Under the pieces are notes generated by a model, which did not search any database, had not been told where the DNA came from, and was given only the letters and a program-made list of their open reading frames with translations. DNA of 64,000 bases from Epithemia pelagica (taxonomy: Eukaryota > Protista > Bacillariophyta), in the NCBI GenBank assembly GCA_946965045.2, contig OX337230.1, positions 2,356,001-2,420,000 of the forward strand, given 5' to 3'. The translations under genes were made by a program, and so were the position numbers. Positions 11,288 through 64,000 of this stretch are shown piece by piece; position 1 is the first letter of the stretch; every line of letters begins with the position of its first letter.

Positions 11288-13171
11288 ATGCAAGGCAACA
11301 AGGAACATGTGTCCGAGTTAGCTTCATCCTTTCACCGATCAAGCTCTAGGTTCGATATATCAGCGAGCGAAGAGACTGAGCTAGCTGTTTTTGATGGTGG
11401 AGGTGTTTGGAACAACCTGCGACGACGCAAGGCGGGCAACCATTCCAAAGGAAGTCAAGACAATGAGGAGGATGAGAACAACAAAATATCCCGCGTCGCC
11501 TACGTAGATATGCCCTTGCAGTTTCGCATGGAAGAGCAGCAACTAGGATTTTCATCCAACTCGAGATTGGGTGTCAATTCGACCATGGTTCTATCACCTC
11601 AATGGACGGGAACGCTGGCCTCGTTTGCTGATATTCGTGGCGACAAGTCGGGGTATACTCAAGCCAAGGTGGAGTTGGACTACGAAATTCCTCCCTCCTC
11701 ATTGTCAAAAGTAGTGTCATGGTGTGAAAAGGCCAGTTTGAATGTTGGTGTACAAGCAAGAGGATGCCACCAAGTTCATGTAGAAGGAAAAGTGGCCCTC
11801 CATGCCGACCAGACAACGCCCTATTTCTTGAGAAAACGAATAGGTCCGACAGGTGATCTCAACCTGTCAGCACGTTATACACAATGGCTGAATCACCCAA
11901 TTGGAAATGCTACTGAACCGAGCATTGGTGAAACCACCCTTTCGGCAAGTCAAAAATATGGAATTTTCAAGGTTCAGTCGACTTACACCATACCCAACAA
12001 TTGGTGGTCGGCCGTACCAACACTAGACCTTTCCATATCTTCCCTTCCATCCTACCATCCGTGGATCATTAAAGCAGGATGGAGACTGAAGCAAAAAGAT
12101 GATAGCATTCTTCCTTATGGAAGCATTAGCCTCACGCCGAAACTCTCCGATATCTTGAGTCTTCATTTCAATGCCGCCTGGACCTGGTCACGTGGTCTGA
12201 CCACTACATGTATGTGGAAGCAAGATTTAAGTGGAAAGCCCTCTTCTGCTGCTTCGTTGGACCCATTGCCAGCGTCGAAACCATCACGAGAAAAGTCTTT
12301 ACAGTTGGGTGTCCAAACCAATTGGATGATTCAACGAACGGCCGCTCTATTCGTATGGACGGACAGCGATTTTCGACTTCGTATTCCTATCGGCATTGTT
12401 CCCTCCTCAAATACGTTGCTCGATAGCTGGTCATTTTCCCTTCAAACCATGTTTCTCACCATTTTGACAAGGGTAATTCAAGATGGCCTTGCCGACATGT
12501 TTCATTTGCGCATGGTCCAAATTCAAGCACAGGAAACGGAGCAACAACAATCTCTGTTGCGACGCCAAAAAGCACGGGAGGATGCTATTAAACAGCAACA
12601 TTTGATGAATCGGCAAGCACAAAACCGTATTGAAGAAGAAGGAGAAATTGGTCTTGTCATTCAAAAAGCGCTTTACGGAATCCACTTGCACGAAAATGAC
12701 GAGTCAATTCACCGGCCGGAGACCGAGGGTGAAAATCCCAATTCTAGTGGCGCCCTGGCACAATCTAGCACAGCTACGGAAATTGCTCAAACGCAAGATC
12801 ACTGTTTGGATGTCACGGTTCCTCTGCAATTTTGGGTACAACAAGGTCAATTGGATCTACCGGCCATGTCTAAGCGCAATTTACTGGGCTTCTGCGATCC
12901 TCGTCCACTGTCCTCCAATAAAAATCAACCACCAGAACTGGAAGGTTCAGGGGAGCGTTCCACACAGACTTGGACAACATGGTGGAAGGGCTTTGTAACG
13001 CACAAAAAGGATCATCCTTGCCGAGGAACGAACGAACAAAGTCATCACTTGCAGCTATTTGTTCGATACCGTTGTGGAGGGTTCTTGTATGAAATAACCA
13101 TTGAAGATGAAGAAGGAATGACCTTACCTCATCCCCATGCAGTGCAAGTCACAGAGACGGTGGCACAATAG
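11288..13171 (+). CDS. DNAJC11-like protein with the C-terminal DUF3395 domain; no J-domain visible
   Basis: Coiled coil, then GLVIQKALYG, LDVTVPLQFWV, SKRNLLGFCDP, LFVRY. First in-frame ATG at 11288. Confidence 0.75.
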   Translation: MQGNKEHVSELASSFHRSSSRFDISASEETELAVFDGGGVWNNLRRRKAGNHSKGSQDNEEDENNKISRVAYVDMPLQFRMEEQQLGFSSNSRLGVNSTMVLSPQWTGTLASFADIRGDKSGYTQAKVELDYEIPPSSLSKVVSWCEKASLNVGVQARGCHQVHVEGKVALHADQTTPYFLRKRIGPTGDLNLSARYTQWLNHPIGNATEPSIGETTLSASQKYGIFKVQSTYTIPNNWWSAVPTLDLSISSLPSYHPWIIKAGWRLKQKDDSILPYGSISLTPKLSDILSLHFNAAWTWSRGLTTTCMWKQDLSGKPSSAASLDPLPASKPSREKSLQLGVQTNWMIQRTAALFVWTDSDFRLRIPIGIVPSSNTLLDSWSFSLQTMFLTILTRVIQDGLADMFHLRMVQIQAQETEQQQSLLRRQKAREDAIKQQHLMNRQAQNRIEEEGEIGLVIQKALYGIHLHENDESIHRPETEGENPNSSGALAQSSTATEIAQTQDHCLDVTVPLQFWVQQGQLDLPAMSKRNLLGFCDPRPLSSNKNQPPELEGSGERSTQTWTTWWKGFVTHKKDHPCRGTNEQSHHLQLFVRYRCGGFLYEITIEDEEGMTLPHPHAVQVTETVAQ

Positions 13172-48117: not shown

Positions 48118-48367
48118 TGTCAACACAAATGTGACAGTCAGTCTCTGATTTCAACAGGATCTCTCCAAGCAAGCAAGATGTTGATTACCTTGCTCTGTCT
48201 TCTTCTTGATGCATATCCATATGATGCGAATGATGGTGTAGTGGCCGATCATACCACATTCCACGTGGCGGATGGAAGATCTCCCCATTCGCGACTGAAT
48301 AAATTTTAGTCGCATTAGGATGGTCAGGAGACGCTTTTCGATCGCATAGAATGAAACTTTCAAAAAA

Positions 48368-50263
48368 ATGACAATGAGAGATGAGAGAGCGTCGAACGAT
48401 CCAGTTTTGTCCTTGACATCATCCTCTTCTTTCTCATCGTCCTTGGTGCAGCATAGAAGACCGCACAATGATGGTGGTTCGAGAAAGAGAGTGGATTCGT
48501 CGGTACGATTCACTTCCGAACCAAAGAACAACAAGCCACTGAGGGATGGGTTCCACACGACAAAGACGACGACCAACACCAAAAAGAATCCAAGACCAAG
48601 GGGACGTAGATGGCGAATGGGACATGTATTCTTTGTGACCCTTTTATTGGTCGTGGGTGGTGTTTTCTTGATTGTCTCGTGGTCTCTGGATCTGAAACAA
48701 CCAGAACCACCTCGTCCTCCCGAGTCGGTCAAGGACATGGTGGACCGAATGATTCGTTTGGCGTCGTCGTCGTCCTCCTTCCCTTTGAACCATGAAGAAC
48801 CACCATCCGCCGACAAAACCAACAATGCATCCTGTGCTCTTTTATTTTATGGCTTGCCTCGAGCCTTTCGACGCATTGTCTTGCCCTCCATTGTTCGAAA
48901 TATTCTCCTCCCCAACGCACGCTACCAGTGTGATGTCTATGTGTATTTCCATGCCTTGACGCAAGAAGACAGTGGTCGATCGGGACAGGGTGGATGTCTG
49001 GACCTCAATGCCGTTTATAGATTGCGATCGGCCGTTTCGTACGTCATGGCACACCACCACCAACAATCTCCACCACCCAAGGGCGATCCATGGCCTCCCT
49101 CCAACAAGGACCAGAACATCACCGTGCCTCCCTCTTCGCCACGAGTGGTGATTGCCAACTTTACCAATGCAGACTTTGCCCAACAACAAGCAGCCGTCTT
49201 GCACAAGATTCGGTCTACAGTAGATCCCACCACCAATTTGAGTCGTTATGTGCCTTGGACGGCTGGATTCACCTTGGAGACGGTGGACAATGTGATTCGT
49301 ATGTACCATGCCATTCAAGGAGTCTGGGAGTTGATGATGAAAAGCACCAACTCCATGACCACAACAACGCCAATAACATCGGCAGACCAAGAATCACGAC
49401 AAGCAAGGGCGAGGACAAGGGCACAGAGCCCCTACGATCGTGTGGCCATTTTTCGTATTGATGTCTTTTATGCGACACCCATTGATATTTTTTACTATGT
49501 GAACCTGTCCTTGTCAACTAATGAAACCACATCAACACCACAACAATACGAAAAAGAGGAGCACCTGATCACAGAGGCTCCAGACTCCAATGCGACAAGC
49601 CCAGGCGTGACAAGGAAACGAATTTATGATGCGGACAATCGCGTGGCTGTGGTACCGGGCTTTGCTCGATATCCGGTGAATGATCGAATGATGTATGGAC
49701 CCTACGAGGCGGTGGAAATTTATTCCAGTCGCCGATTTGACTTGTTGGATCGATTTGTCCAGGAACATGGGCAAGGATTGCATCCCGAAATCTTTTTGGC
49801 CCAAGTCATTTTCCCCGAAATTCGTCGTCGCACCGTATCCTTAGGAGCAAACTTGTCAGTGTCCAGTGGAGGGCCTCAAACCATATCTTCTTCCACATCT
49901 GATAATAACCATCACCTGAATGTCACCGACACTCCCTCTTCTCTTCGACCACAAGAAGGAGCGAGTACTTTTCTCGTTCATGAAGACGCGAGTATTTGCT
50001 TTGTTCGAGCACGTGCCGATGAGTCTGTATGGATCAACGATTGCAAACGCGGGAAACGGTTGCCGGGACTGCCTCGTCCAACAGGCCCCAACATTGTGCA
50101 AGAAACTTTGGATCACTTGCAACAAACCCTCGGTGCGAGCCATTGTACCACGGAAAAATTCAAAAAACGGCTCTCGGCCAATGTAACATACGGTGGTGTT
50201 CTTCAGGCAACCTGCCAAACCAACGATAAGACAAGTGTAGAGTCCTCCTGTTCTCCTCCTTGA
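48368..50263 (+). CDS. Type II membrane protein, glycosyltransferase-like family of unknown function
   Basis: TM anchor, then CALLFYGLPR, CDVYVYFH, YHAIQGVWELM, YDRVAIFRIDV, PVNDRMMYG, ICFVRARAD. Confidence 0.6.
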   Translation: MTMRDERASNDPVLSLTSSSSFSSSLVQHRRPHNDGGSRKRVDSSVRFTSEPKNNKPLRDGFHTTKTTTNTKKNPRPRGRRWRMGHVFFVTLLLVVGGVFLIVSWSLDLKQPEPPRPPESVKDMVDRMIRLASSSSSFPLNHEEPPSADKTNNASCALLFYGLPRAFRRIVLPSIVRNILLPNARYQCDVYVYFHALTQEDSGRSGQGGCLDLNAVYRLRSAVSYVMAHHHQQSPPPKGDPWPPSNKDQNITVPPSSPRVVIANFTNADFAQQQAAVLHKIRSTVDPTTNLSRYVPWTAGFTLETVDNVIRMYHAIQGVWELMMKSTNSMTTTTPITSADQESRQARARTRAQSPYDRVAIFRIDVFYATPIDIFYYVNLSLSTNETTSTPQQYEKEEHLITEAPDSNATSPGVTRKRIYDADNRVAVVPGFARYPVNDRMMYGPYEAVEIYSSRRFDLLDRFVQEHGQGLHPEIFLAQVIFPEIRRRTVSLGANLSVSSGGPQTISSSTSDNNHHLNVTDTPSSLRPQEGASTFLVHEDASICFVRARADESVWINDCKRGKRLPGLPRPTGPNIVQETLDHLQQTLGASHCTTEKFKKRLSANVTYGGVLQATCQTNDKTSVESSCSPP

Positions 50264-57249: not shown

Positions 57250-58560
57250 CAGTCCTTGCAAGTCTGTGAATAGCAAACTGAGAGACCCGTACTCCACGAA
57301 AGCATCCTTGCAAGTGGTGGGGTTATGCAGGATGAGGTCAGACAAAGCAACTTGATTATTGATGTAATTGTTTTAAGTACAGTTTTGCTTGAGGCGATTC
57401 AAACTGATACGGAATTCAGATTCGAAACCACCGGTTACTTGAACTTCAGGAGGTTCTTGTTGACCATAATGAAGCTCTCTGGCGACAGTTGGAGGTTCTT
57501 CCATAGTGATGACAAGGAATGAAGAGCGATGGCAACAAAAATGAGGCTCGTGAATTTTCAAAGAAAAAGATTGTAACTAAACAGTCGATGGTCAGAACAT
57601 GCACCTCTGACCACCATTCGAAAGAACACAGTAAGACGCTTCTACGATAACAAACAGTAGGCCTATAACATACTAAAAGTCATTGACATGATATGATCGT
57701 TGCAAAGTCTCAATTTTGGCAATTGATGATATTATTGTCTATCATTTTTTATTCATGAGTGGATATTGCTCACCTGGTATTTTATTAAGTAAGATTGCAT
57801 ATTTGTTGTTAAATACACTGGGTAACAATATTGTCAATGACTGGGCAAAAACGTGGCAGTGCTGATAGGGTTAAGTTCGGTAGAGGTAAATTGAGTGGAC
57901 TCTAGTCGATGAGAAATTGGTTGTTGATTCTTTTTGGAAGGAACTGACATTCTAAGTTGTGGTGTGAAGTGTGAAGAAAGGTGCAGACTTGGGGTATCCA
58001 TTGCGAAGGAGCTAGGTGGGGAAGAGGAGTCGCAAGGTCTTCAAAGATGGATACACTTTTGCCGGCAAGGAATTGTGCCCATGAGATGGCAATGTTGGCT
58101 AACTTGGCAGGGCCACCTGGAGATCTAAGGCATGCCATAAATAGATAAGTCTTCGAGACATCCATCCAGAACATAGGGTCTAGTGCCTTCACGGGTGATA
58201 CGGCCAGACCCTGCATTTTAGCGGCCAAATGACCATGGTGGTCTTTAACGATTACTAGCTCAATATAGCACCTCCATAGAAATGGGATGATAGAAATCAT
58301 CTTCATACAATGCTTTAGGTCCCCACCGGGCACTTTTTCCATATCTGCCATCGTCATCGAGTTCTCTCTCATCATTGTAGGGTCATTTTTTTTTTGCGAT
58401 TTGGCTGCTAGATTGCCCGTTGGCCGGTACATTCACCATGCGCTTTCTCCACCAATACTTGACCAATTGCCATGAAGTTAAAATATGTTATCGACCTTAG
58501 TGTAAATGAGAACACTATTGACCCATATAGGCTATCCCCAAGCATAGGATGCAAACGAGC
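57250..58560 (-). mobile_element. Degenerate non-LTR (LINE) retrotransposon ORF2 fragment; boundaries approximate
   Basis: LRSPGGPAKLANIAISWAQFLAG...IFE...PLPHL...WIPQVCTFL...PKRINNQFLID resembles the post-RT region of stramenopile LINEs. Many stops around it. Confidence 0.6.
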
Positions 58561-58631
58561 TTCCACACCATTGCGTCAATTTTTCGACGTGGCACGGACC
58601 ACATGAGATTAGCCTACTCATTCGTCGAAGT

Positions 58632-59617
58632 CAGCTCCATGAATACGGCCGCTCCAGACGTCCTACTTAGTAGTCTTTTATGTTAGGCTCTACTTTAGCG
58701 ATCTGAGGTATCAGATCGATCATCGGTGATATGGCCATTGAGAAAAGGCCATCCATCGATGGACGCTTCTTTTCGACGCATCACACACAACACGAGTTTT
58801 CGACCAAAGGATGACGAGACCCGGCTCCATGGATATGGCCGCTCCAGACGTCCTACTTAGTAGTCTTTTATGTTAGGCTCTACTTTAGCGATCTGAGGTA
58901 TCAGATTGATCATCGGTGATATGGCCATTGAGAAAAGGCCATCCATCGATGGACGCTTCTTTTCGACGCATCACACACAACACGAGTTTTCGACCAAAGG
59001 ATGACGAGACCCGGCTCCATGGATATGGCCGCTCCAGACGTCCTACTTAGTAGTCTTTTATGTTAGGCTCTACTTTAGCGATCTGAGGTATCAGATCGAT
59101 CATCGGTGATATGGCCATTGAGAAAAGGCCATCCATCGATGGACGCTTCTTATCGACGCATCACACACAACACGAGTTTTCGACCAAAGGATGACGAGAC
59201 CCGGCTCCATGGATATGGCCGCTCCAGACGTCCTACTTAGTAGTCTTTTATGTTAGGCTCTACTTTAGCGATCTGAGGTATCACATTGATCATCGGTGAT
59301 ATGGCCATTGAGAAAGGCCATCCATCGATGGACGCTTCTTTTCGACGCATCACACACAACACGAGTTTTCGACCAAAGGATGACGAGACCCTGCTCCATG
59401 GATATGGCCGCTCCAGACGTCCTACTTAGTAGTCTTTTATGTTAGGCTCTACTTTAGCGATCTGAGGTATCAGATTGATCATCGGTGATATGGCCATTGA
59501 GAAAGGGCCATCCATCGATGGACGCTTCTTTTCGACGCATCACACACAACACGAGTTTTCGACCAAAGGATGACAAGACCCAGCTCCATGAATATGGCCG
59601 CTCCAGACGTCCTACTT
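58632..59617 (+). repeat. Tandem array of a 190-bp unit, about 5.2 copies (left arm)
   Basis: GCTCCAGACG recurs at 58651, 58841, 59031, 59221, 59410 and 59600. The unit contains the palindrome TCCATCGATGGA. Confidence 0.97.
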
Positions 59618-60508
59618 CTTTGACCGTTACTATGGAGTGCACGGCACCTGAGACGGGAGTAAAGCTTGTTGGAATCGGATACAAGTACAACTCACGGAAG
59701 GTCCTCCTCTTTGTTATGACTAAAAATGCGGGGAAAACGATCCCGGGATCTCCGTACATTGCTCGATTTACCGATGAGTTCGGCAATGTCAAAAGCCGGA
59801 GAGTCGAACGGCCTGACTGTATTTCCCAGTACTTCAAGTGTGCAAATAAAATTGACCGTCACAATCATCTGCGTCAGGGCATCCTCCGTCTCGAGCAGTA
59901 CTGGAGAACAGTTGATCCATGGTTTTGCATTGCGACAACGGTGTTCGGAATGACAGTGTCTGATTGTTACCTTGGCATGCGTTTTCATCTGCAAGCGGAA
60001 CCATTCTCAAGCTTTACGATCGAAGACTTCGCGGATATGCTCGCAAACGACCTTTTGAGAAACAACTTTTCCGATGATCGCAGCAAACATCCCAGTGACA
60101 CGTCGTCCGCCGCTTTCGGTACACACTGTTGGGCCCTCAGCTTCTGTGCCATCGAGCGTGCACAATGTGGGGGGGGGGGGGGGGGGGGGGAATGCGTCTC
60201 CTAACTCCATGGTGTCTGATCTGACCAATGATTCACTGGTTTGTCATGAGGTTGTGGAACAGGCAGAAAAGTCTTTATCTGACCAGCGGCCCGTGAAGCG
60301 CAAATGTGTTATTTGTAAAAATGACACGAGATCAATGTGCGGGCATCCAACATGCTGCAATATAATCAAGATGTTTCGTGGGGAAGCCAAAGTTGGAGTT
60401 CCTTTGTGTAAGCCCTCCATGGGTATTCGTCGCGGGCAAGTGCGGACTTGCCTTGAAGAGCACATGTGCCGTGTTATTGCGGCAAGCCAAAAGGAAAACC
60501 ACAACTGA
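59485..60508 (+). pseudogene. 5'-truncated piggyBac-like transposase, frameshifted before the Cys-rich C-terminal domain
   Basis: GIGYKYNSRKV, GSPYIARFTDEFGNV, RP...YFKCANKIDRHNHLRQG...LEQYW...WF; in the next frame CVIC...C...C...LC...CLEEH. Confidence 0.8.
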
Positions 60509-60639
60509 TTTGTCCCGAACATGAGAACCGGGTCGACTCTACATTGTTTCATGTCTTTGCATATTAATAAATTATGATTAGGAGCTTAGTAACATCGAAA
60601 TCTTAGTACTCAAGTGTAATATGCTATGGGATCCTACGA

Positions 60640-61176
60640 CTAATAGGTTCGAACGCTCTCCTGATGGGGCCACGTCTCTGTCGCTTTATCAAAAAGTGAC
60701 ATGAATGTAGCCATCCCAACAACACTCATCCGCACAGTAATGACCATGGGCCCCATGGCCATCTTGGTATCCAAAGAATGAGCCGTTTCAATCGTGAGCT
60801 CTCCTTTGACAAGGGAACCGCTCTTGGAACGGAACTTCTTGGAGCGTATTTTCTTGTAGATCGATCCGACTGGGATGACGACACCAGGCATCGAATCATC
60901 CATCTTCTCCCGACCAAATGCGCTAATTGATAGCATCCCACCGTTGCTCCCGTACTTGGAGCGCTGTAAAAGAACGACACCTCGATCCACCACAAGCGTC
61001 CCCTTTCCACCTTTCCCATCACGAGCGGCGTCTTGGACGTACACATTCACGCCCACTTCGCCATAGATCGTTGCTCGGCTACCATGGAGCTGAATCTCGC
61101 TCTCGTCATCTTGCATCACGTTGAACCCATTTGCAAGGAGAAGTCTATTGCGCGATTCGTGCTCGTATTCCGACAT
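60640..61176 (-). CDS. Hypothetical 178-aa beta-rich protein inside the inverted-repeat structure
   Basis: Intact ATG-initiated ORF with globular composition; no family recognised. Confidence 0.5.
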   Translation of the reverse strand: MSEYEHESRNRLLLANGFNVMQDDESEIQLHGSRATIYGEVGVNVYVQDAARDGKGGKGTLVVDRGVVLLQRSKYGSNGGMLSISAFGREKMDDSMPGVVIPVGSIYKKIRSKKFRSKSGSLVKGELTIETAHSLDTKMAMGPMVITVRMSVVGMATFMSLFDKATETWPHQESVRTY

Positions 61177-61665
61177 CGTCCTTCGTCCATCGTAAATGTA
61201 GAAAATATGAAGGGTGAGACGCGATGAGTCGCACAGTGCAAAACAAGTTTGAGATAGGCACTTACCTCTTTTCCTACTCCTTATTGGATTGTCAAATGAA
61301 AAGTCTTTAGTTAGAGGAGCTTGCCACTCAGATGGCCGATCAATTCTCTCCTCTCTGCACGAAAGGACGAACACGTCCGTGGTATCCAGTCGGCATGCAT
61401 AAAAATGCAGTTGTGGTTTGGGGGAAACGGTGGGGACTTTCTACAATTGCCACTCGGGATTAATTAAAACAACGTGACGATATGCTTAAGAAAAGTTCCA
61501 TCCGTTGAAGCGCGTGCCCTCCACAATTTACAGCGCGACAAGATTTTAATGTGAGACGACTGGTCGATCATCAATCAAATAACAAGAGCAACCTTCCCAT
61601 AAAGGCATAAAGGACAGCAAGGAAAAGAAAACAGACGACAAAAGCAAGGACAAAGAAAGAAAGAC

Positions 61666-62178
61666 ATGTCGCTCTACATCGACAAGCGCCGTGTTAGTGC
61701 GAGGCTCCAAGGCCGTACGACCAAAAGTGTTGTCACAACTGGTGCATCCAAACCCACTATGCGCCCAACCCAAAAAGGTGCCCACAAGAACAACAAGAAC
61801 AACAACAACGACGACAATGCAAAAGCCGTAGATACGGAGAAGAAGAAGGAGATCTTGCTCGGGTGTGATGCAATTGGTGTGGAAATGAGTCGATCATCAA
61901 TCCTCAAGATGAGAGACGATTTCCTGGAACATGGATCGAACGGAGGGAGCAACACTCCAGTGCGCCATTCCAAGATCAAGTTTGCTGATGAGATCAGCCC
62001 CATCCCTGAAGACAATCAGAAGCCTTCGTCCCGTTTATCCACCCTGAGCGCCGCCTCCATACGTAGCCTCAAGAGTGCATCTTCCCGTGGAACTGCTGTA
62101 GACAGCGATCTTTCGTTCGACTTTGCCGAGACTCAACAAGATGACGGTGAGTTCCTCTTCAACACCTATGGAAAATAA
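61666..62178 (+). CDS. Hypothetical 170-aa protein inside the inverted-repeat structure
   Basis: Intact ATG-initiated ORF, divergent from the preceding one; basic N-terminus and acidic C-terminus. Confidence 0.45.
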   Translation: MSLYIDKRRVSARLQGRTTKSVVTTGASKPTMRPTQKGAHKNNKNNNNDDNAKAVDTEKKKEILLGCDAIGVEMSRSSILKMRDDFLEHGSNGGSNTPVRHSKIKFADEISPIPEDNQKPSSRLSTLSAASIRSLKSASSRGTAVDSDLSFDFAETQQDDGEFLFNTYGK

Positions 62179-62258
62179 ATGATAGTTAAGCCTGTCAAGT
62201 ATAGTAATGACGATAAATATGGAAACATAAGCTTTAGAGTTGGATCATAGCGCGGCTT

Positions 62259-62755
62259 CGTCCATTGGTCCAAAATCCTTGTGCTCCGTGGCACGACGAA
62301 TGATTGTCCATGGATGATCGCCTCGATCATGAGGACCATGGCCCCTAAGCCGGATCTAAGACTTGTGTAACCTAACTTAGTCTCTATAGTAACGGGCAAA
62401 AAAGTAGGACGTCCAGAGGGACCATTGTCGAATATTGGCATGGCATCGTCCATTGGTCCAAAATCCTTGTGCTCCGTGGCACGACAAATGATTGTCCATG
62501 GATGATCGCCTCGATCATGAGGACCATGGCCCCTACGCCGGATCTGAGACTTGTATAACCTAACTTAATCTCTATAGTAACGGGCAAAAAAGTAGGACGT
62601 CCGGAGGGACCATTGTCGAATATTGGCATGGCATCGTCCATTGGTCCAAAATCCTTGCGCTCCGTGGCACGACAAATGATTGTGTATGGATGATCGCCTC
62701 GATCATGAGGACCATGGCCCCTACGCCGGATCTGAGACTTGTATAACCTAACTTA
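62259..62755. repeat. Tandem array of a 188-bp unit, about 2.6 copies; the third copy resumes after the MITE at 63576
   Basis: CGTCCATTGGTCCAAAATCC at 62259, 62447 and 62635. Confidence 0.95.
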
Positions 62756-63572
62756 GGCTATCTCCACCCGAGCGCCGCTATGCTGACGTATTGGGGCTTT
62801 CTGATTGGCCTCGCTATCCGGATAGCGGATTAGCGGAGCCAAAGGGAAATAAACTCCACGATCTCCGTTAAAAGAACGCCGCTATCTCGCGCTGCGCGTA
62901 CGCATTGCGCATATGCCCTCTCTTGTTTCGGTTAAAAATTAAAAAGGGGTGCGACCGCGGAAGTTGCGGAATTCAAACAAGACAATCAACGAGAGCACAA
63001 AGCATAAACCAAAGATGGAGGACTCGTTGTTCTCCCTCTTCATTGTTGACTGTCATGGTGAATCATGTTGTTGTTCATGGCCAATGTAGATGTAGGCTGT
63101 AGGTTGTAGGTTGCAGTCCAATCTTCCTATTCCCTGTCCGATTTCCGATTGATTGTCTGATAATTGATAATCGAACTCATCAATAGTTTGAATGATGCAT
63201 TTGTTTGATTGTTGCATTCCTTCCGATCCGTGATCCTCGAATCATCTTGCTGTGCATGTGCATGGTTCTTGTCCCATTGTAGGAAGTAGGGAACACAACA
63301 ATGGAAAAAGAGATGGTAAGCAATCGTCACAATCAATACGTGCCATTGCCATGTTTTCGACATGAGAGATTCAAAGTTTCACTGTTGGCAACAGATATTA
63401 ATTTATTTATGCCGACGGTTATATTTTGCTCCGCTATCCGCTATTTTCCCCGCTATTCGGGGCCCCCAATAGCGGCAAAAATAGCGGATAGTGGAGCTGG
63501 TTAGCGGTTAGAGGAGATGGTGGAGTTCGATAGCGGTTTTGGGGCCTTTAGCGGGCCCGGGTGGAGATAGCC
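62756..63572. mobile_element. PIF/Harbinger (Tourist-like) MITE, 817 bp
   Basis: 18-bp TIR GGCTATCTCCACCCG(A/G)GC; TTA TSD at 62753-55 and 63573-75. Removing it restores the 188-bp unit. Confidence 0.92.
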
Positions 63573-63597
63573 TTAGTCTCTATAGTAACGGGCAAAA

Positions 63598-64000
63598 AAG
63601 TAGGACGTCTGGAGCGGCCATATCCATGGAGCCGGGTCTCGTCATCCTTTGGTCGAAAACTTGTGTTGTGTGTGATGCGTCGATAAGAAGCGTCCATCGA
63701 TGGATGGCCTTTTCTCAATGGCCATATCACCGATGATCGATCTGATACCTCAGATCGCTAAAGTAGAGCCTAACATAAAAGACTACTAAGTAGGACGTCT
63801 GGAGCGGCCATATCCATGGAGCCGGGTCTCGTCATCCTTTGGTCGAAAACTCGTGTTGTGTGTGATGCGTCGAAAAGAAGCGTCCATCGATGGATGGCCT
63901 TTTCTCAATGGCCATATCACCGATGATCGATCTGATACCTCAGATCGCTAAAGTAGAGCCTAACATAAAAGACTACTAAGTAGGACGTCTGGAGCGGCCG
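63598..64000 (-). repeat. Inverted copy of the 190-bp array (right arm), at least 2 copies, runs off the window
   Basis: TAGGACGTCT at 63601, 63791 and 63981; reverse complement of the 58632-59617 unit. Confidence 0.97.

What the first reader, a model, noticed from the sequence alone, without database searches (positions are those of the whole stretch)
58632..64000. Foldback-like composite element: inverted 190-bp tandem arrays enclosing a piggyBac-like transposase and cargo
Seen: about 5.2 forward copies (58632-59617) and at least 2 inverted copies (63598-end) of the same 190-bp unit. Both arms leave the array at the same base (...GACGTCCTACTT) and stay 17/20 identical for 20 more bp (59618-59637 vs 63578-63597). 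Between them lie a truncated transposase, two orphan ORFs, a 188-bp array and a MITE. Established: Drosophila FB and Galileo have long TIRs built of tandem repeats, associated with other transposase superfamilies. Inference: this may be a foldback element linked to a piggyBac-like transposase, or an inverted duplication created by repair. It is a candidate rearrangement hotspot either way.
Basis: partly seen in the sequence, partly recalled or inferred. Interest (0 to 1): 0.8.

Follow-up and report, generated by a model that had tools for sequence, protein, structure and literature searches.

The report
Deleted piggyBac-type transposon with repeat-built ends
This is a broken, 6.3-kb copy of a 14-kb piggyBac-type jumping gene of a diatom; its family has kilobase-long inverted ends built from about 190-bp repeats, carries three extra conserved genes and inserts at CTAG rather than piggyBac's usual TTAA.

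Summary
In detail: 5.2 forward and 2.2 inverted copies of one 190-bp unit, 97-100% alike. The arrays are not the ends. The inverted repeat runs 450 bp further out on each side. The element spans window 58184-64463 (the last 463 bp lie past the window) and is flanked by CTAG on both sides.

Four other copies of 13.8-22 kb share the same termini and CTAG flanks, and a diverged sister family has CTAG, CTAT or ATAG direct duplications. This is therefore a transposon with a 4-bp target duplication, not a repair-made palindrome.

Full-length copies encode a spliced piggyBac-type transposase (Pfam PF13843; piggyBat structure E 3.7e-7), a SET-domain protein with a probable iron/2-oxoglutarate oxygenase-like tail, and two small genes. 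All four are under purifying selection (dN/dS 0.19-0.37).

The window copy lost about 7.7 kb by a microhomology deletion. It keeps only the transposase tail, which is further broken, plus both small genes intact. An 817-bp Harbinger-like MITE (TTA duplication) sits in its right arm.

Other agents of this scan described the same family elsewhere in this genome. I found no paper describing it.

The parts
58180..58183 (.). Left target-site duplication, CTAG
   Evidence: The same CTAG follows the right end at window-equivalent 64464-64467 (read from L031). It is present at both ends of 4 family-A copies.
58184..58633 (+). Outer unique part of the left terminal inverted repeat (450 bp), starting TGCCTTCACGGG
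   Evidence: It differs at 4 of 450 sites from the right outer segment (L031 7013-7463) and by 1.3-3.8% from other copies.
58634..59617 (+). 190-bp tandem array, 5.2 copies (middle part of the left TIR)
   Evidence: TRF score 1884, 97% matches. In the genome the unit occurs only in +/- pairs inside elements, apart from one 76-bp fragment on C10.
59618..59640 (+). First ~20 bp of the inner 188-bp array, then the internal-deletion junction
   Evidence: Compared with copy C18, the left TIR joins transposase codons at an imperfect 6-bp microhomology (ATAGAG / ATGGAG).
59632..60508 (+). 3' remnant of the piggyBac-type transposase gene (third catalytic-Asp region and Cys-rich tail only)
   Evidence: 97.5% identical to C18 6252->5371 and lacks the LDE and DSWF motifs. 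It has a 23-bp frameshift deletion at 60083/60084 and a G7->G22 expansion starting at 60168.
60643..61176 (-). Accessory gene p178 (178 aa), intact
   Evidence: 98% identical to C18 and 74-75% to family B, with dN/dS 0.19. No Pfam or Atlas hit; the AF2 model is poor.
61666..62178 (+). Accessory gene p170 (170 aa), intact
   Evidence: Conserved in family B at 50-55% amino-acid identity, with dN/dS 0.37.
62254..62755 (-). 188-bp tandem array, 2.7 copies (inner part of the right TIR)
   Evidence: TRF. The unit is homologous to the 190-bp unit over its whole length (62%).
62756..63572 (.). Nested 817-bp MITE with TIR GGCTATCTCCACCCG and TTA target duplication (PIF/Harbinger-like)
   Evidence: It interrupts a sequence that is continuous in C18. 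About 40 near full-length copies at 88-97% identity occur in the genome.
63573..63597 (-). Rest of the last 188-bp unit, at the junction with the 190-bp array
   Evidence: Continuous with 62755 once the MITE is removed; identical arrangement in C18 14215-14300.
63598..64000 (-). Inverted 190-bp array (2.2 copies, runs to 64012), followed beyond the window by the 451-bp outer TIR segment to 64463

Best explanation
The locus is one internally deleted, non-autonomous copy (6,280 bp, window 58184-64463) of a roughly 14-kb cut-and-paste DNA transposon family of the piggyBac superfamily. A full-length element has terminal inverted repeats of 1.5-2.4 kb. Each repeat is built of a 450-bp unique tip, a 190-bp tandem array and a related 188-bp tandem array. 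Between the repeats lie four genes: p170, p178, a spliced transposase of roughly 1,000 aa or more, and a SET-domain protein with a probable Fe/2-oxoglutarate-oxygenase-like C-terminal domain. Shown: the element inserted at a CTAG site and duplicated those 4 bp. Shown: this copy lost about 7.7 kb, comprising the left 188-bp array, the SET gene and the 5' two-thirds or more of the transposase. The deletion joined at a short microhomology, which is typical of interrupted gap repair after excision or of replication slippage. Shown: the copy later gained a Harbinger-like MITE in its right arm, a 23-bp frameshift and a poly-G expansion. Inferred: it can move only if transposase is supplied in trans by copies whose main transposase exon is still open (C18, C2a, C5). 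Inferred: the arrays provide many extra transposase-binding sites that help synapsis of the ends, and their copy number drifts by unequal exchange or slippage (2.2-6.2 copies per arm in this family, 2.6-13.8 in the sister family).
For: Same termini at five loci with different flanks, four of them with CTAG on both sides. The sister family has CTAG/CTAG twice, CTAT/CTAT and ATAG/ATAG as direct repeats. This fixes a 4-bp duplication with the element starting at TGCC. The window interior is collinear with full-length copies at 97.5% over 3.15 kb, and the deletion junction and MITE insertion site are resolved to the base. Transposase: Pfam PF13843 E 5e-8, 33.1 bits against a cut-off of 22.4. There are 90 homologues, many carrying PF13843. 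Conserved LDE, DSWF and ID.HN motifs and a Cys-rich tail are present. A family profile hits the piggyBat transposase 9c0f at E 3.7e-7 with LDE aligned. Two canonical GT..AG introns restore the conserved reading. The main transposase exon is open in C18, C5 and C2a. Gene order and all four proteins are conserved between families, with dN/dS of 0.19, 0.19, 0.37 and 0.37. Array lengths vary between arms and copies. Chen et al. 2020 (PMC7351741) report that adding transposase-binding sites to piggyBac ends stimulates activity.
Against: No empty site was found for this copy, and no second copy of the deleted form exists. Movement after the deletion is therefore unproven. The binding-site role of the arrays is untested: the terminal motif recurs in the 190-bp unit only marginally (12/14, reached by 5 of 200 shuffles) and not in the 188-bp or sister-family units. 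The second and third catalytic Asp were placed by family motifs only, not by alignment to a solved piggyBac. Reads were not available to exclude assembly error in the arrays or the poly-G run.
Confidence: 0.88

Rival explanations
1. The arrays have no role in transposition. They are neutral satellite-like expansions inside the subterminal regions, tolerated because only the outer tip is needed by the transposase.
For: Copy number varies freely, from 2.2 to 13.8 per arm. The window copy lacks a whole left 188-bp array. Canonical piggyBac needs only tens of bp at each end (PMC7351741). There is no clear recurrence of the terminal motif in the units.
Against: An array of a homologous ~190-bp unit is kept on both arms in every copy of both families, although the units have diverged to 62-70% identity. 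Short blocks such as TCCTACTT are conserved in all three unit types.
Confidence: 0.4
2. The structure is an inverted duplication or palindrome produced by break repair, not by transposition.
For: Long near-identical inverted arms with an internal deletion junction at a microhomology.
Against: Four further loci carry the same termini with different flanks, all with a CTAG next to the terminus and four with it on both sides. The sister family shows non-palindromic direct 4-bp duplications. The interior is collinear with full-length elements.
Confidence: 0.02
3. The inverted arrays are an assembly artefact, with reads of one array folded back or collapsed.
For: Repeats and a 22-nt poly-G run are error-prone, and no reads were available.
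Against: The same architecture is assembled independently at 9 or more loci on 8 contigs. The arms carry private differences (4 of 450 sites) and there is a unique nested MITE.
Confidence: 0.03
4. It is a member of the Drosophila Foldback/Galileo kind of element.
For: Long inverted ends built of tandem repeats.
Against: The transposase is piggyBac-type and the duplication is 4 bp. From my own knowledge, Galileo uses a P-type transposase with 7-bp duplications and FB has 9-bp duplications.
Confidence: 0.01

Closest known systems
piggyBac superfamily elements (T. ni piggyBac, piggyBat; Pfam PF13843)
   Same: Homologous transposase core with the LDE first-Asp motif aligned to piggyBat, a C-terminal Cys-rich tail, and a 4-bp target duplication with central TA.
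   Different: The target is CTAG (variants CTAT, ATAG) instead of TTAA. The TIRs are 1.5-3.3 kb rather than 12-19 bp and begin with T, not the conserved C. Elements are 14 kb with three additional conserved genes, and the transposase gene is spliced. Bouallegue et al. 2017 (PMC5381638) found TTAA in 157 elements, with other duplications only in single, probably mutated copies.
Drosophila Foldback and Galileo elements
   Same: Long inverted termini containing tandem repeats whose number varies between arms and copies.
   Different: Different transposase superfamily and duplication length. Here a 450-bp unique tip lies outside the arrays.
Pokey of Daphnia (piggyBac family with internal ~200-bp repeats; my own knowledge, not checked here)
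   Same: A piggyBac-type element carrying tandem repeats of about 200 bp.
   Different: From memory, Pokey inserts at TTAA in 28S rDNA, has short TIRs and carries its repeats on one side only.
Fungal KDZ transposons associated with TET/JBP dioxygenases (my own knowledge; Iyer et al. 2014, not read here)
   Same: DNA transposons that carry an Fe/2-oxoglutarate-type oxygenase gene.
   Different: Other transposase superfamily. Here the oxygenase-like domain is fused to a SET domain, has no Pfam match, and is absent from the window copy.

Membership tests
piggyBac superfamily | Transposase with the DDE_Tnp_1_7 (PF13843) core | tested here: met
   Exon ORF L041:3650-4297:- scores E 5e-8, 33.1 bits (cut-off 22.4). 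Homologues of the next exon carry PF13843. A family profile hits the piggyBat transposase 9c0f at E 3.7e-7. The window copy keeps only the C-terminal third.
piggyBac superfamily | DDD catalytic triad | tested here: inconclusive
   The first Asp (LDE) aligns to piggyBat. The second (DSWF) and third (ID.HN) are at least 90% conserved in the family alignment, but I did not align them to a solved piggyBac.
piggyBac superfamily | C-terminal cysteine-rich DNA-binding domain | tested here: met
   A conserved C..C...C.H..C...C...C..H pattern in alignment A1. There is a weak local match to the piggyBat tail (domain 2).
piggyBac superfamily | TTAA target-site duplication | tested here: not met
   All 8 elements with both tips intact have identical 4-mers on both sides: CTAG in six, CTAT in one, ATAG in one.
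piggyBac superfamily | Short (12-19 bp) TIRs starting with C (PMC5381638) | tested here: not met
   The TIRs are 0.9-1.5 kb in the window copy and up to 3.3 kb in the sister family, and they start TGCC.
Foldback / Galileo | Long TIRs made largely of tandem repeats | tested here: met
Foldback / Galileo | P-type (Galileo) transposase and 7- or 9-bp duplications (my own knowledge) | tested here: not met
   piggyBac-type transposase and a 4-bp duplication.
PIF/Harbinger MITE (nested element 62756-63572) | 3-bp TWA target duplication and short TIRs | tested here: met
   A TTA duplication is created in the otherwise continuous 188-bp unit, and the TIR is GGCTATCTCCACCCG. A partner transposase was not sought.
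Fe(II)/2-oxoglutarate dioxygenase (C-terminal domain of the SET-ORF; absent from the window copy) | HxD...H iron triad plus a basic 2-oxoglutarate-binding residue on a double-stranded beta-helix | tested here: inconclusive
   H142, D144, H235 and H250 are invariant and R248 nearly so in 44 relatives. The best solved match, FtmOx1, aligns its distal His205, but at E 0.15. No Pfam hit in any member. The AF2 model is unusable, pLDDT 32.
SET-domain methyltransferase (N-terminal half of the same ORF; absent from the window copy) | SET domain, PF00856 | tested here: met
   E 1e-5 to 3.5e-5, 24.6-26.3 bits against a cut-off of 22.4. This is marginal, and catalytic residues were not examined.

The most novel reading that the evidence does not exclude
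A natural piggyBac lineage whose transposase has changed its target from TTAA to CTAG. Its kilobase-long arrays of ~190-bp units act as multi-site landing platforms for the transposase. It also carries its own chromatin- or DNA-modifying enzyme (a SET-oxygenase fusion) plus two small partner proteins needed for its life cycle. The window copy would then be a natural 'mini-element' that keeps the ends and the two small genes only.
Probability: 0.25. Interest if true: 0.75.

Novelty: new variant of a known kind. Interest (0 to 1): 0.55.

Why it matters
Insertion at TTAA is treated as the hallmark of the whole piggyBac superfamily, and its structural basis is known (PMC7351741). A family that consistently duplicates CTAG offers a natural comparison for how the target is read, and that bears on piggyBac-based gene-delivery tools. 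The kilobase-long repeat-built ends and the three selected accessory genes show that piggyBac elements can be much more complex than the textbook 2.5-kb form. For the diatom genome, the copies mark places where deletions, array length changes and nested insertions have occurred. The window copy itself is the ordinary fate of such an element: a decayed deletion derivative.

Tried and rejected
Empty-site search: the flanks joined through one CTAG gave no match at up to 3 mismatches. The left flank is itself old repeat DNA.

Function of p178, p170 and the SET-ORF tail: no Pfam hits. The Atlas gave no usable hit for p178. Word searches found only 4 relatives of p178 and 2 of the tail.

Structure prediction: the AF2 models of the tail and of p178 were too poor (pLDDT 32 and 42) to justify a fold search, so none was run.

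Single-sequence PDB searches of the transposase exons found nothing; only the family profile did.

Terminal motif recurring in the array units: marginal in one unit type, absent in the others.

Literature: no paper in the held library links piggyBac-like elements with CTAG duplications, with foldback-type ends or with diatom SET cargo. Maumus et al. 2009 mention only a transposase 'weakly related to piggyBac' in two diatoms.

Left out: the transposase exons were searched one by one by reference. The joined, spliced protein was not built or searched.
Full report
OBSERVATION. Tandem Repeats Finder reports a 190-bp array at 58634-59617 (5.2 copies, 97% matches). It reports the same unit inverted at 63598-63999 and a 188-bp array at 62254-62755. 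The inverted-repeat scan gives arms of 403 nt at 99% and, at the inner edge, 59313-59637 against 63578-63902. This confirms that both arms continue about 20 bp past the last 190-bp unit. Those 20 bp also match the 188-bp array in inverted orientation (I9/I10), so they are the start of a 188-bp unit.

TRUE BOUNDARIES. The window is C3:2356001-2420000 of a 60.5-Mb, 23-contig assembly. Reading past the window end (L005, L031) shows that the right array stops at 64012. The inverted repeat then continues outward through 451 unique bp, mirrored by 450 bp at 58184-58633 on the left. The element is 6,280 bp, from 58184 to 64463. It begins TGCCTTCACGGG and has CTAG immediately outside both ends.

A DISPERSED FAMILY. 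The 190-bp unit occurs elsewhere only as plus/minus pairs of arrays (apart from one 76-bp fragment on C10). Four further loci at 96-100% unit identity are C2 3.83 Mb, C18 1.26 Mb, C2 1.49 Mb and C5 1.63 Mb. Weaker matches occur in a cluster on C1 (about 84%) and at loci on C1, C8, C9, C11 and C13 (about 75%).
- The four close copies measure 13.8, 14.0, 14.0 and 22 kb. They have the same termini and unrelated flanks. Three have CTAG on both sides; the C5 copy lacks its left tip.
- The diverged 'family B' copies are 11-14.3 kb with a 193-bp unit. Two have CTAG/CTAG, one CTAT/CTAT and one ATAG/ATAG.
- The two non-palindromic cases show a direct 4-bp duplication and fix the element's first base at T of TGCC. 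All 8 elements with both tips intact have matching 4-mers on both sides.
- The outer 450-bp segments differ by 0.4-2.2% between the arms of one copy and by 1.3-3.8% between copies, so the family is young.

WHAT THE WINDOW COPY IS. Window 59632-62759 is 97.5% identical and collinear with the 3.15 kb that lie next to one TIR in the full-length copies.
- The left 190-bp array plus 20 bp of the first 188-bp unit is joined directly to transposase codons. In C18 the two parental sequences read ...GTTACTAT/AGAG... and ...GTCAT/GGAG.... The window reads ...GTTACTATGGAG..., an imperfect 6-bp microhomology.
- About 7.7 kb is missing: the left 188-bp array, the SET-domain gene and most of the transposase.
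- On the right, the 188-bp and 190-bp arrays are contiguous in C18. In the window they are separated by an 817-bp insert (62756-63572) with TIR GGCTATCTCCACCCG and a TTA duplication. This MITE has about 40 near full-length copies at 88-97% identity in the genome.
- The transposase remnant also has a 23-bp frameshift deletion and a G7 to G22 expansion.

GENES OF THE FAMILY. In C18 (L041) the minus strand carries four consecutive open frames.
- One frame hits Pfam PF13843 (piggyBac transposase) at E 5e-8, above the curated cut-off.
- The next, of 440 aa, has 90 homologues, many carrying PF13843.
- The alignment shows conserved LDE, DSWF and ID.HN motifs and a Cys-rich tail.
- A profile of that alignment finds the solved piggyBat transposase (9c0f) at E 3.7e-7, with LDE aligned.
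- Two frame changes are canonical introns, AAG|GTGAGT...ACAG| (67 nt) and G|GTAAGT...TACAG|. Removing them restores the conserved LGTEFK-VTADT and HFWPG-NWRDQ readings.
- I searched the exons separately by reference and did not build the joined protein.

The plus strand carries an 897-aa ORF with a marginal SET domain (E 1e-5 to 3.5e-5).
- Its C-terminal 300 aa have 218 relatives in the large library.
- These relatives show invariant Q..HxD, H.G and H residues and a nearly invariant R.
- No member has a Pfam hit.
- The best solved match is FtmOx1, an Fe/2-oxoglutarate oxygenase. Its distal iron-binding His205 aligns, but only at E 0.15.
- I regard an oxygenase fold as probable, not shown. This gene is absent from the window copy.

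The two 'orphan ORFs' are p178 (61176->60643, minus strand) and p170 (61666-62178, plus strand). Both are intact in the window.

All four proteins occur in the same order in family B. Between families, dN/dS is 0.19 for the transposase exon, 0.19 for p178, 0.37 for p170 and 0.37 for the SET-ORF. They are therefore selected genes of the element, not captured cargo. The functions of p178 and p170 remain unknown.

THE ARRAYS. The 190-bp, 188-bp and family-B 193-bp units are homologous over their whole length (62-70% identity). They share short blocks such as TCCTACTT. Copy numbers per arm range from 2.2 to 6.2 in family A and from 2.6 to 13.8 in family B, and they differ between the two arms of one element.

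Retention of arrays on both arms through this much divergence suggests a role. The most likely role is extra transposase-binding sites, and added binding sites are reported to stimulate piggyBac (PMC7351741). My test for recurrence of the terminal motif in the units was only marginal. I give this role about 0.4-0.5 against neutral expansion.

MECHANISM.
- Shown: insertion with a 4-bp CTAG duplication, then an internal microhomology deletion, then a nested MITE.
- Inferred from the family: cut-and-paste by a DDD transposase making 4-nt staggered cuts, as in piggyBac.
- Inferred: the window copy depends on transposase from copies whose main exon is open (C18, C5, C2a).
- Not shown: whether the copy moved after its deletion, because it is the only deleted copy and no empty site exists in the assembly.

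COMPARISON WITH WHAT IS KNOWN. Bouallegue et al. 2017 define the superfamily by TTAA duplications and 12-19-bp TIRs with a conserved first C. Among 157 elements they saw other duplications only in single, probably mutated copies, and no diatom is mentioned (PMC5381638). This family meets the protein criteria and fails the TTAA and short-TIR criteria. It works like piggyBac and belongs to the superfamily by transposase homology, but as a distinct variant. It resembles Foldback and Galileo only in architecture. I found no paper describing it.

EARLIER NOTES OF THIS SCAN. Other agents described the same family at other loci of this genome, with the same main conclusions. I had reached the CTAG duplication and the four-gene conclusion before reading those notes. 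Their oxygenase claim I tested only partly.

LIMITS. No reads were available.

VERDICT. It is a decayed deletion derivative of an unusual piggyBac-type family. The family is a new variant of a known kind. The window copy adds the anatomy of its decay.

Noticed in passing
window 48358-49740 and L031:7612-9000 (C3:2420612-2422000): A 1.39-kb stretch starting 144 bp right of the right-hand CTAG (148 bp from the element's last base) is 95% identical, in direct orientation, to window 48358-49740. It begins just upstream of an ATG-initiated ORF, so this looks like a gene duplicate 16 kb apart with TE-filled DNA between the copies.
   Followed up: partly
window 62756-63572: An 817-bp MITE family with TIR GGCTATCTCCACCCG, a TTA duplication and an internal 35-nt palindrome at 63428-63497. 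About 40 near full-length copies at 88-97% identity across many contigs suggest recent activity.
   Followed up: partly
G000 C2:2757161-2759758, C9:3292080-3294674, C16:2471058-2473652, C1:5118548-5121142, C5:1337251-1339845 and others: More than 20 further ORFs of ~971 aa, 42-45% identical to the SET-oxygenase-like protein and many near-identical to each other. They are not next to any detected piggyBac-type transposase, so another mobile family may carry the same fusion gene.
   Followed up: no
G000 C1:643913-713336: A 70-kb cluster holds several arrays of an 84%-identity subfamily in both orientations. It has three transposase fragments and two SET-ORF fragments, plus a second type of piggyBac transposase. 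It is a better candidate for a rearrangement hotspot than the window locus. The DNA could not be fetched.
   Followed up: no
L038-L040 (C5:1625683-1647714): The C5 copy is 22 kb, lacks 15 bp of its left tip and has an extra 188-bp array in its interior (element position 11535-12262). This suggests an internal duplication or a nested second copy.
   Followed up: no
window 60168-60189: A run of 22 G where other copies have 7. This is either a real homopolymer expansion or a sequencing artefact.
   Followed up: partly
window 57700-58178: The left flank of the element consists of pieces that recur at about 75% identity at 10 other loci, so the element landed in older repeat DNA.
   Followed up: partly
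G000 C11:1825211, C6:26473, C2:5110480, C7:3271741, C8:180015 and others: At least 20 further piggyBac-type transposase genes (52-57% identical, open frames of 511-599 aa) belong to other families in this genome.
   Followed up: no
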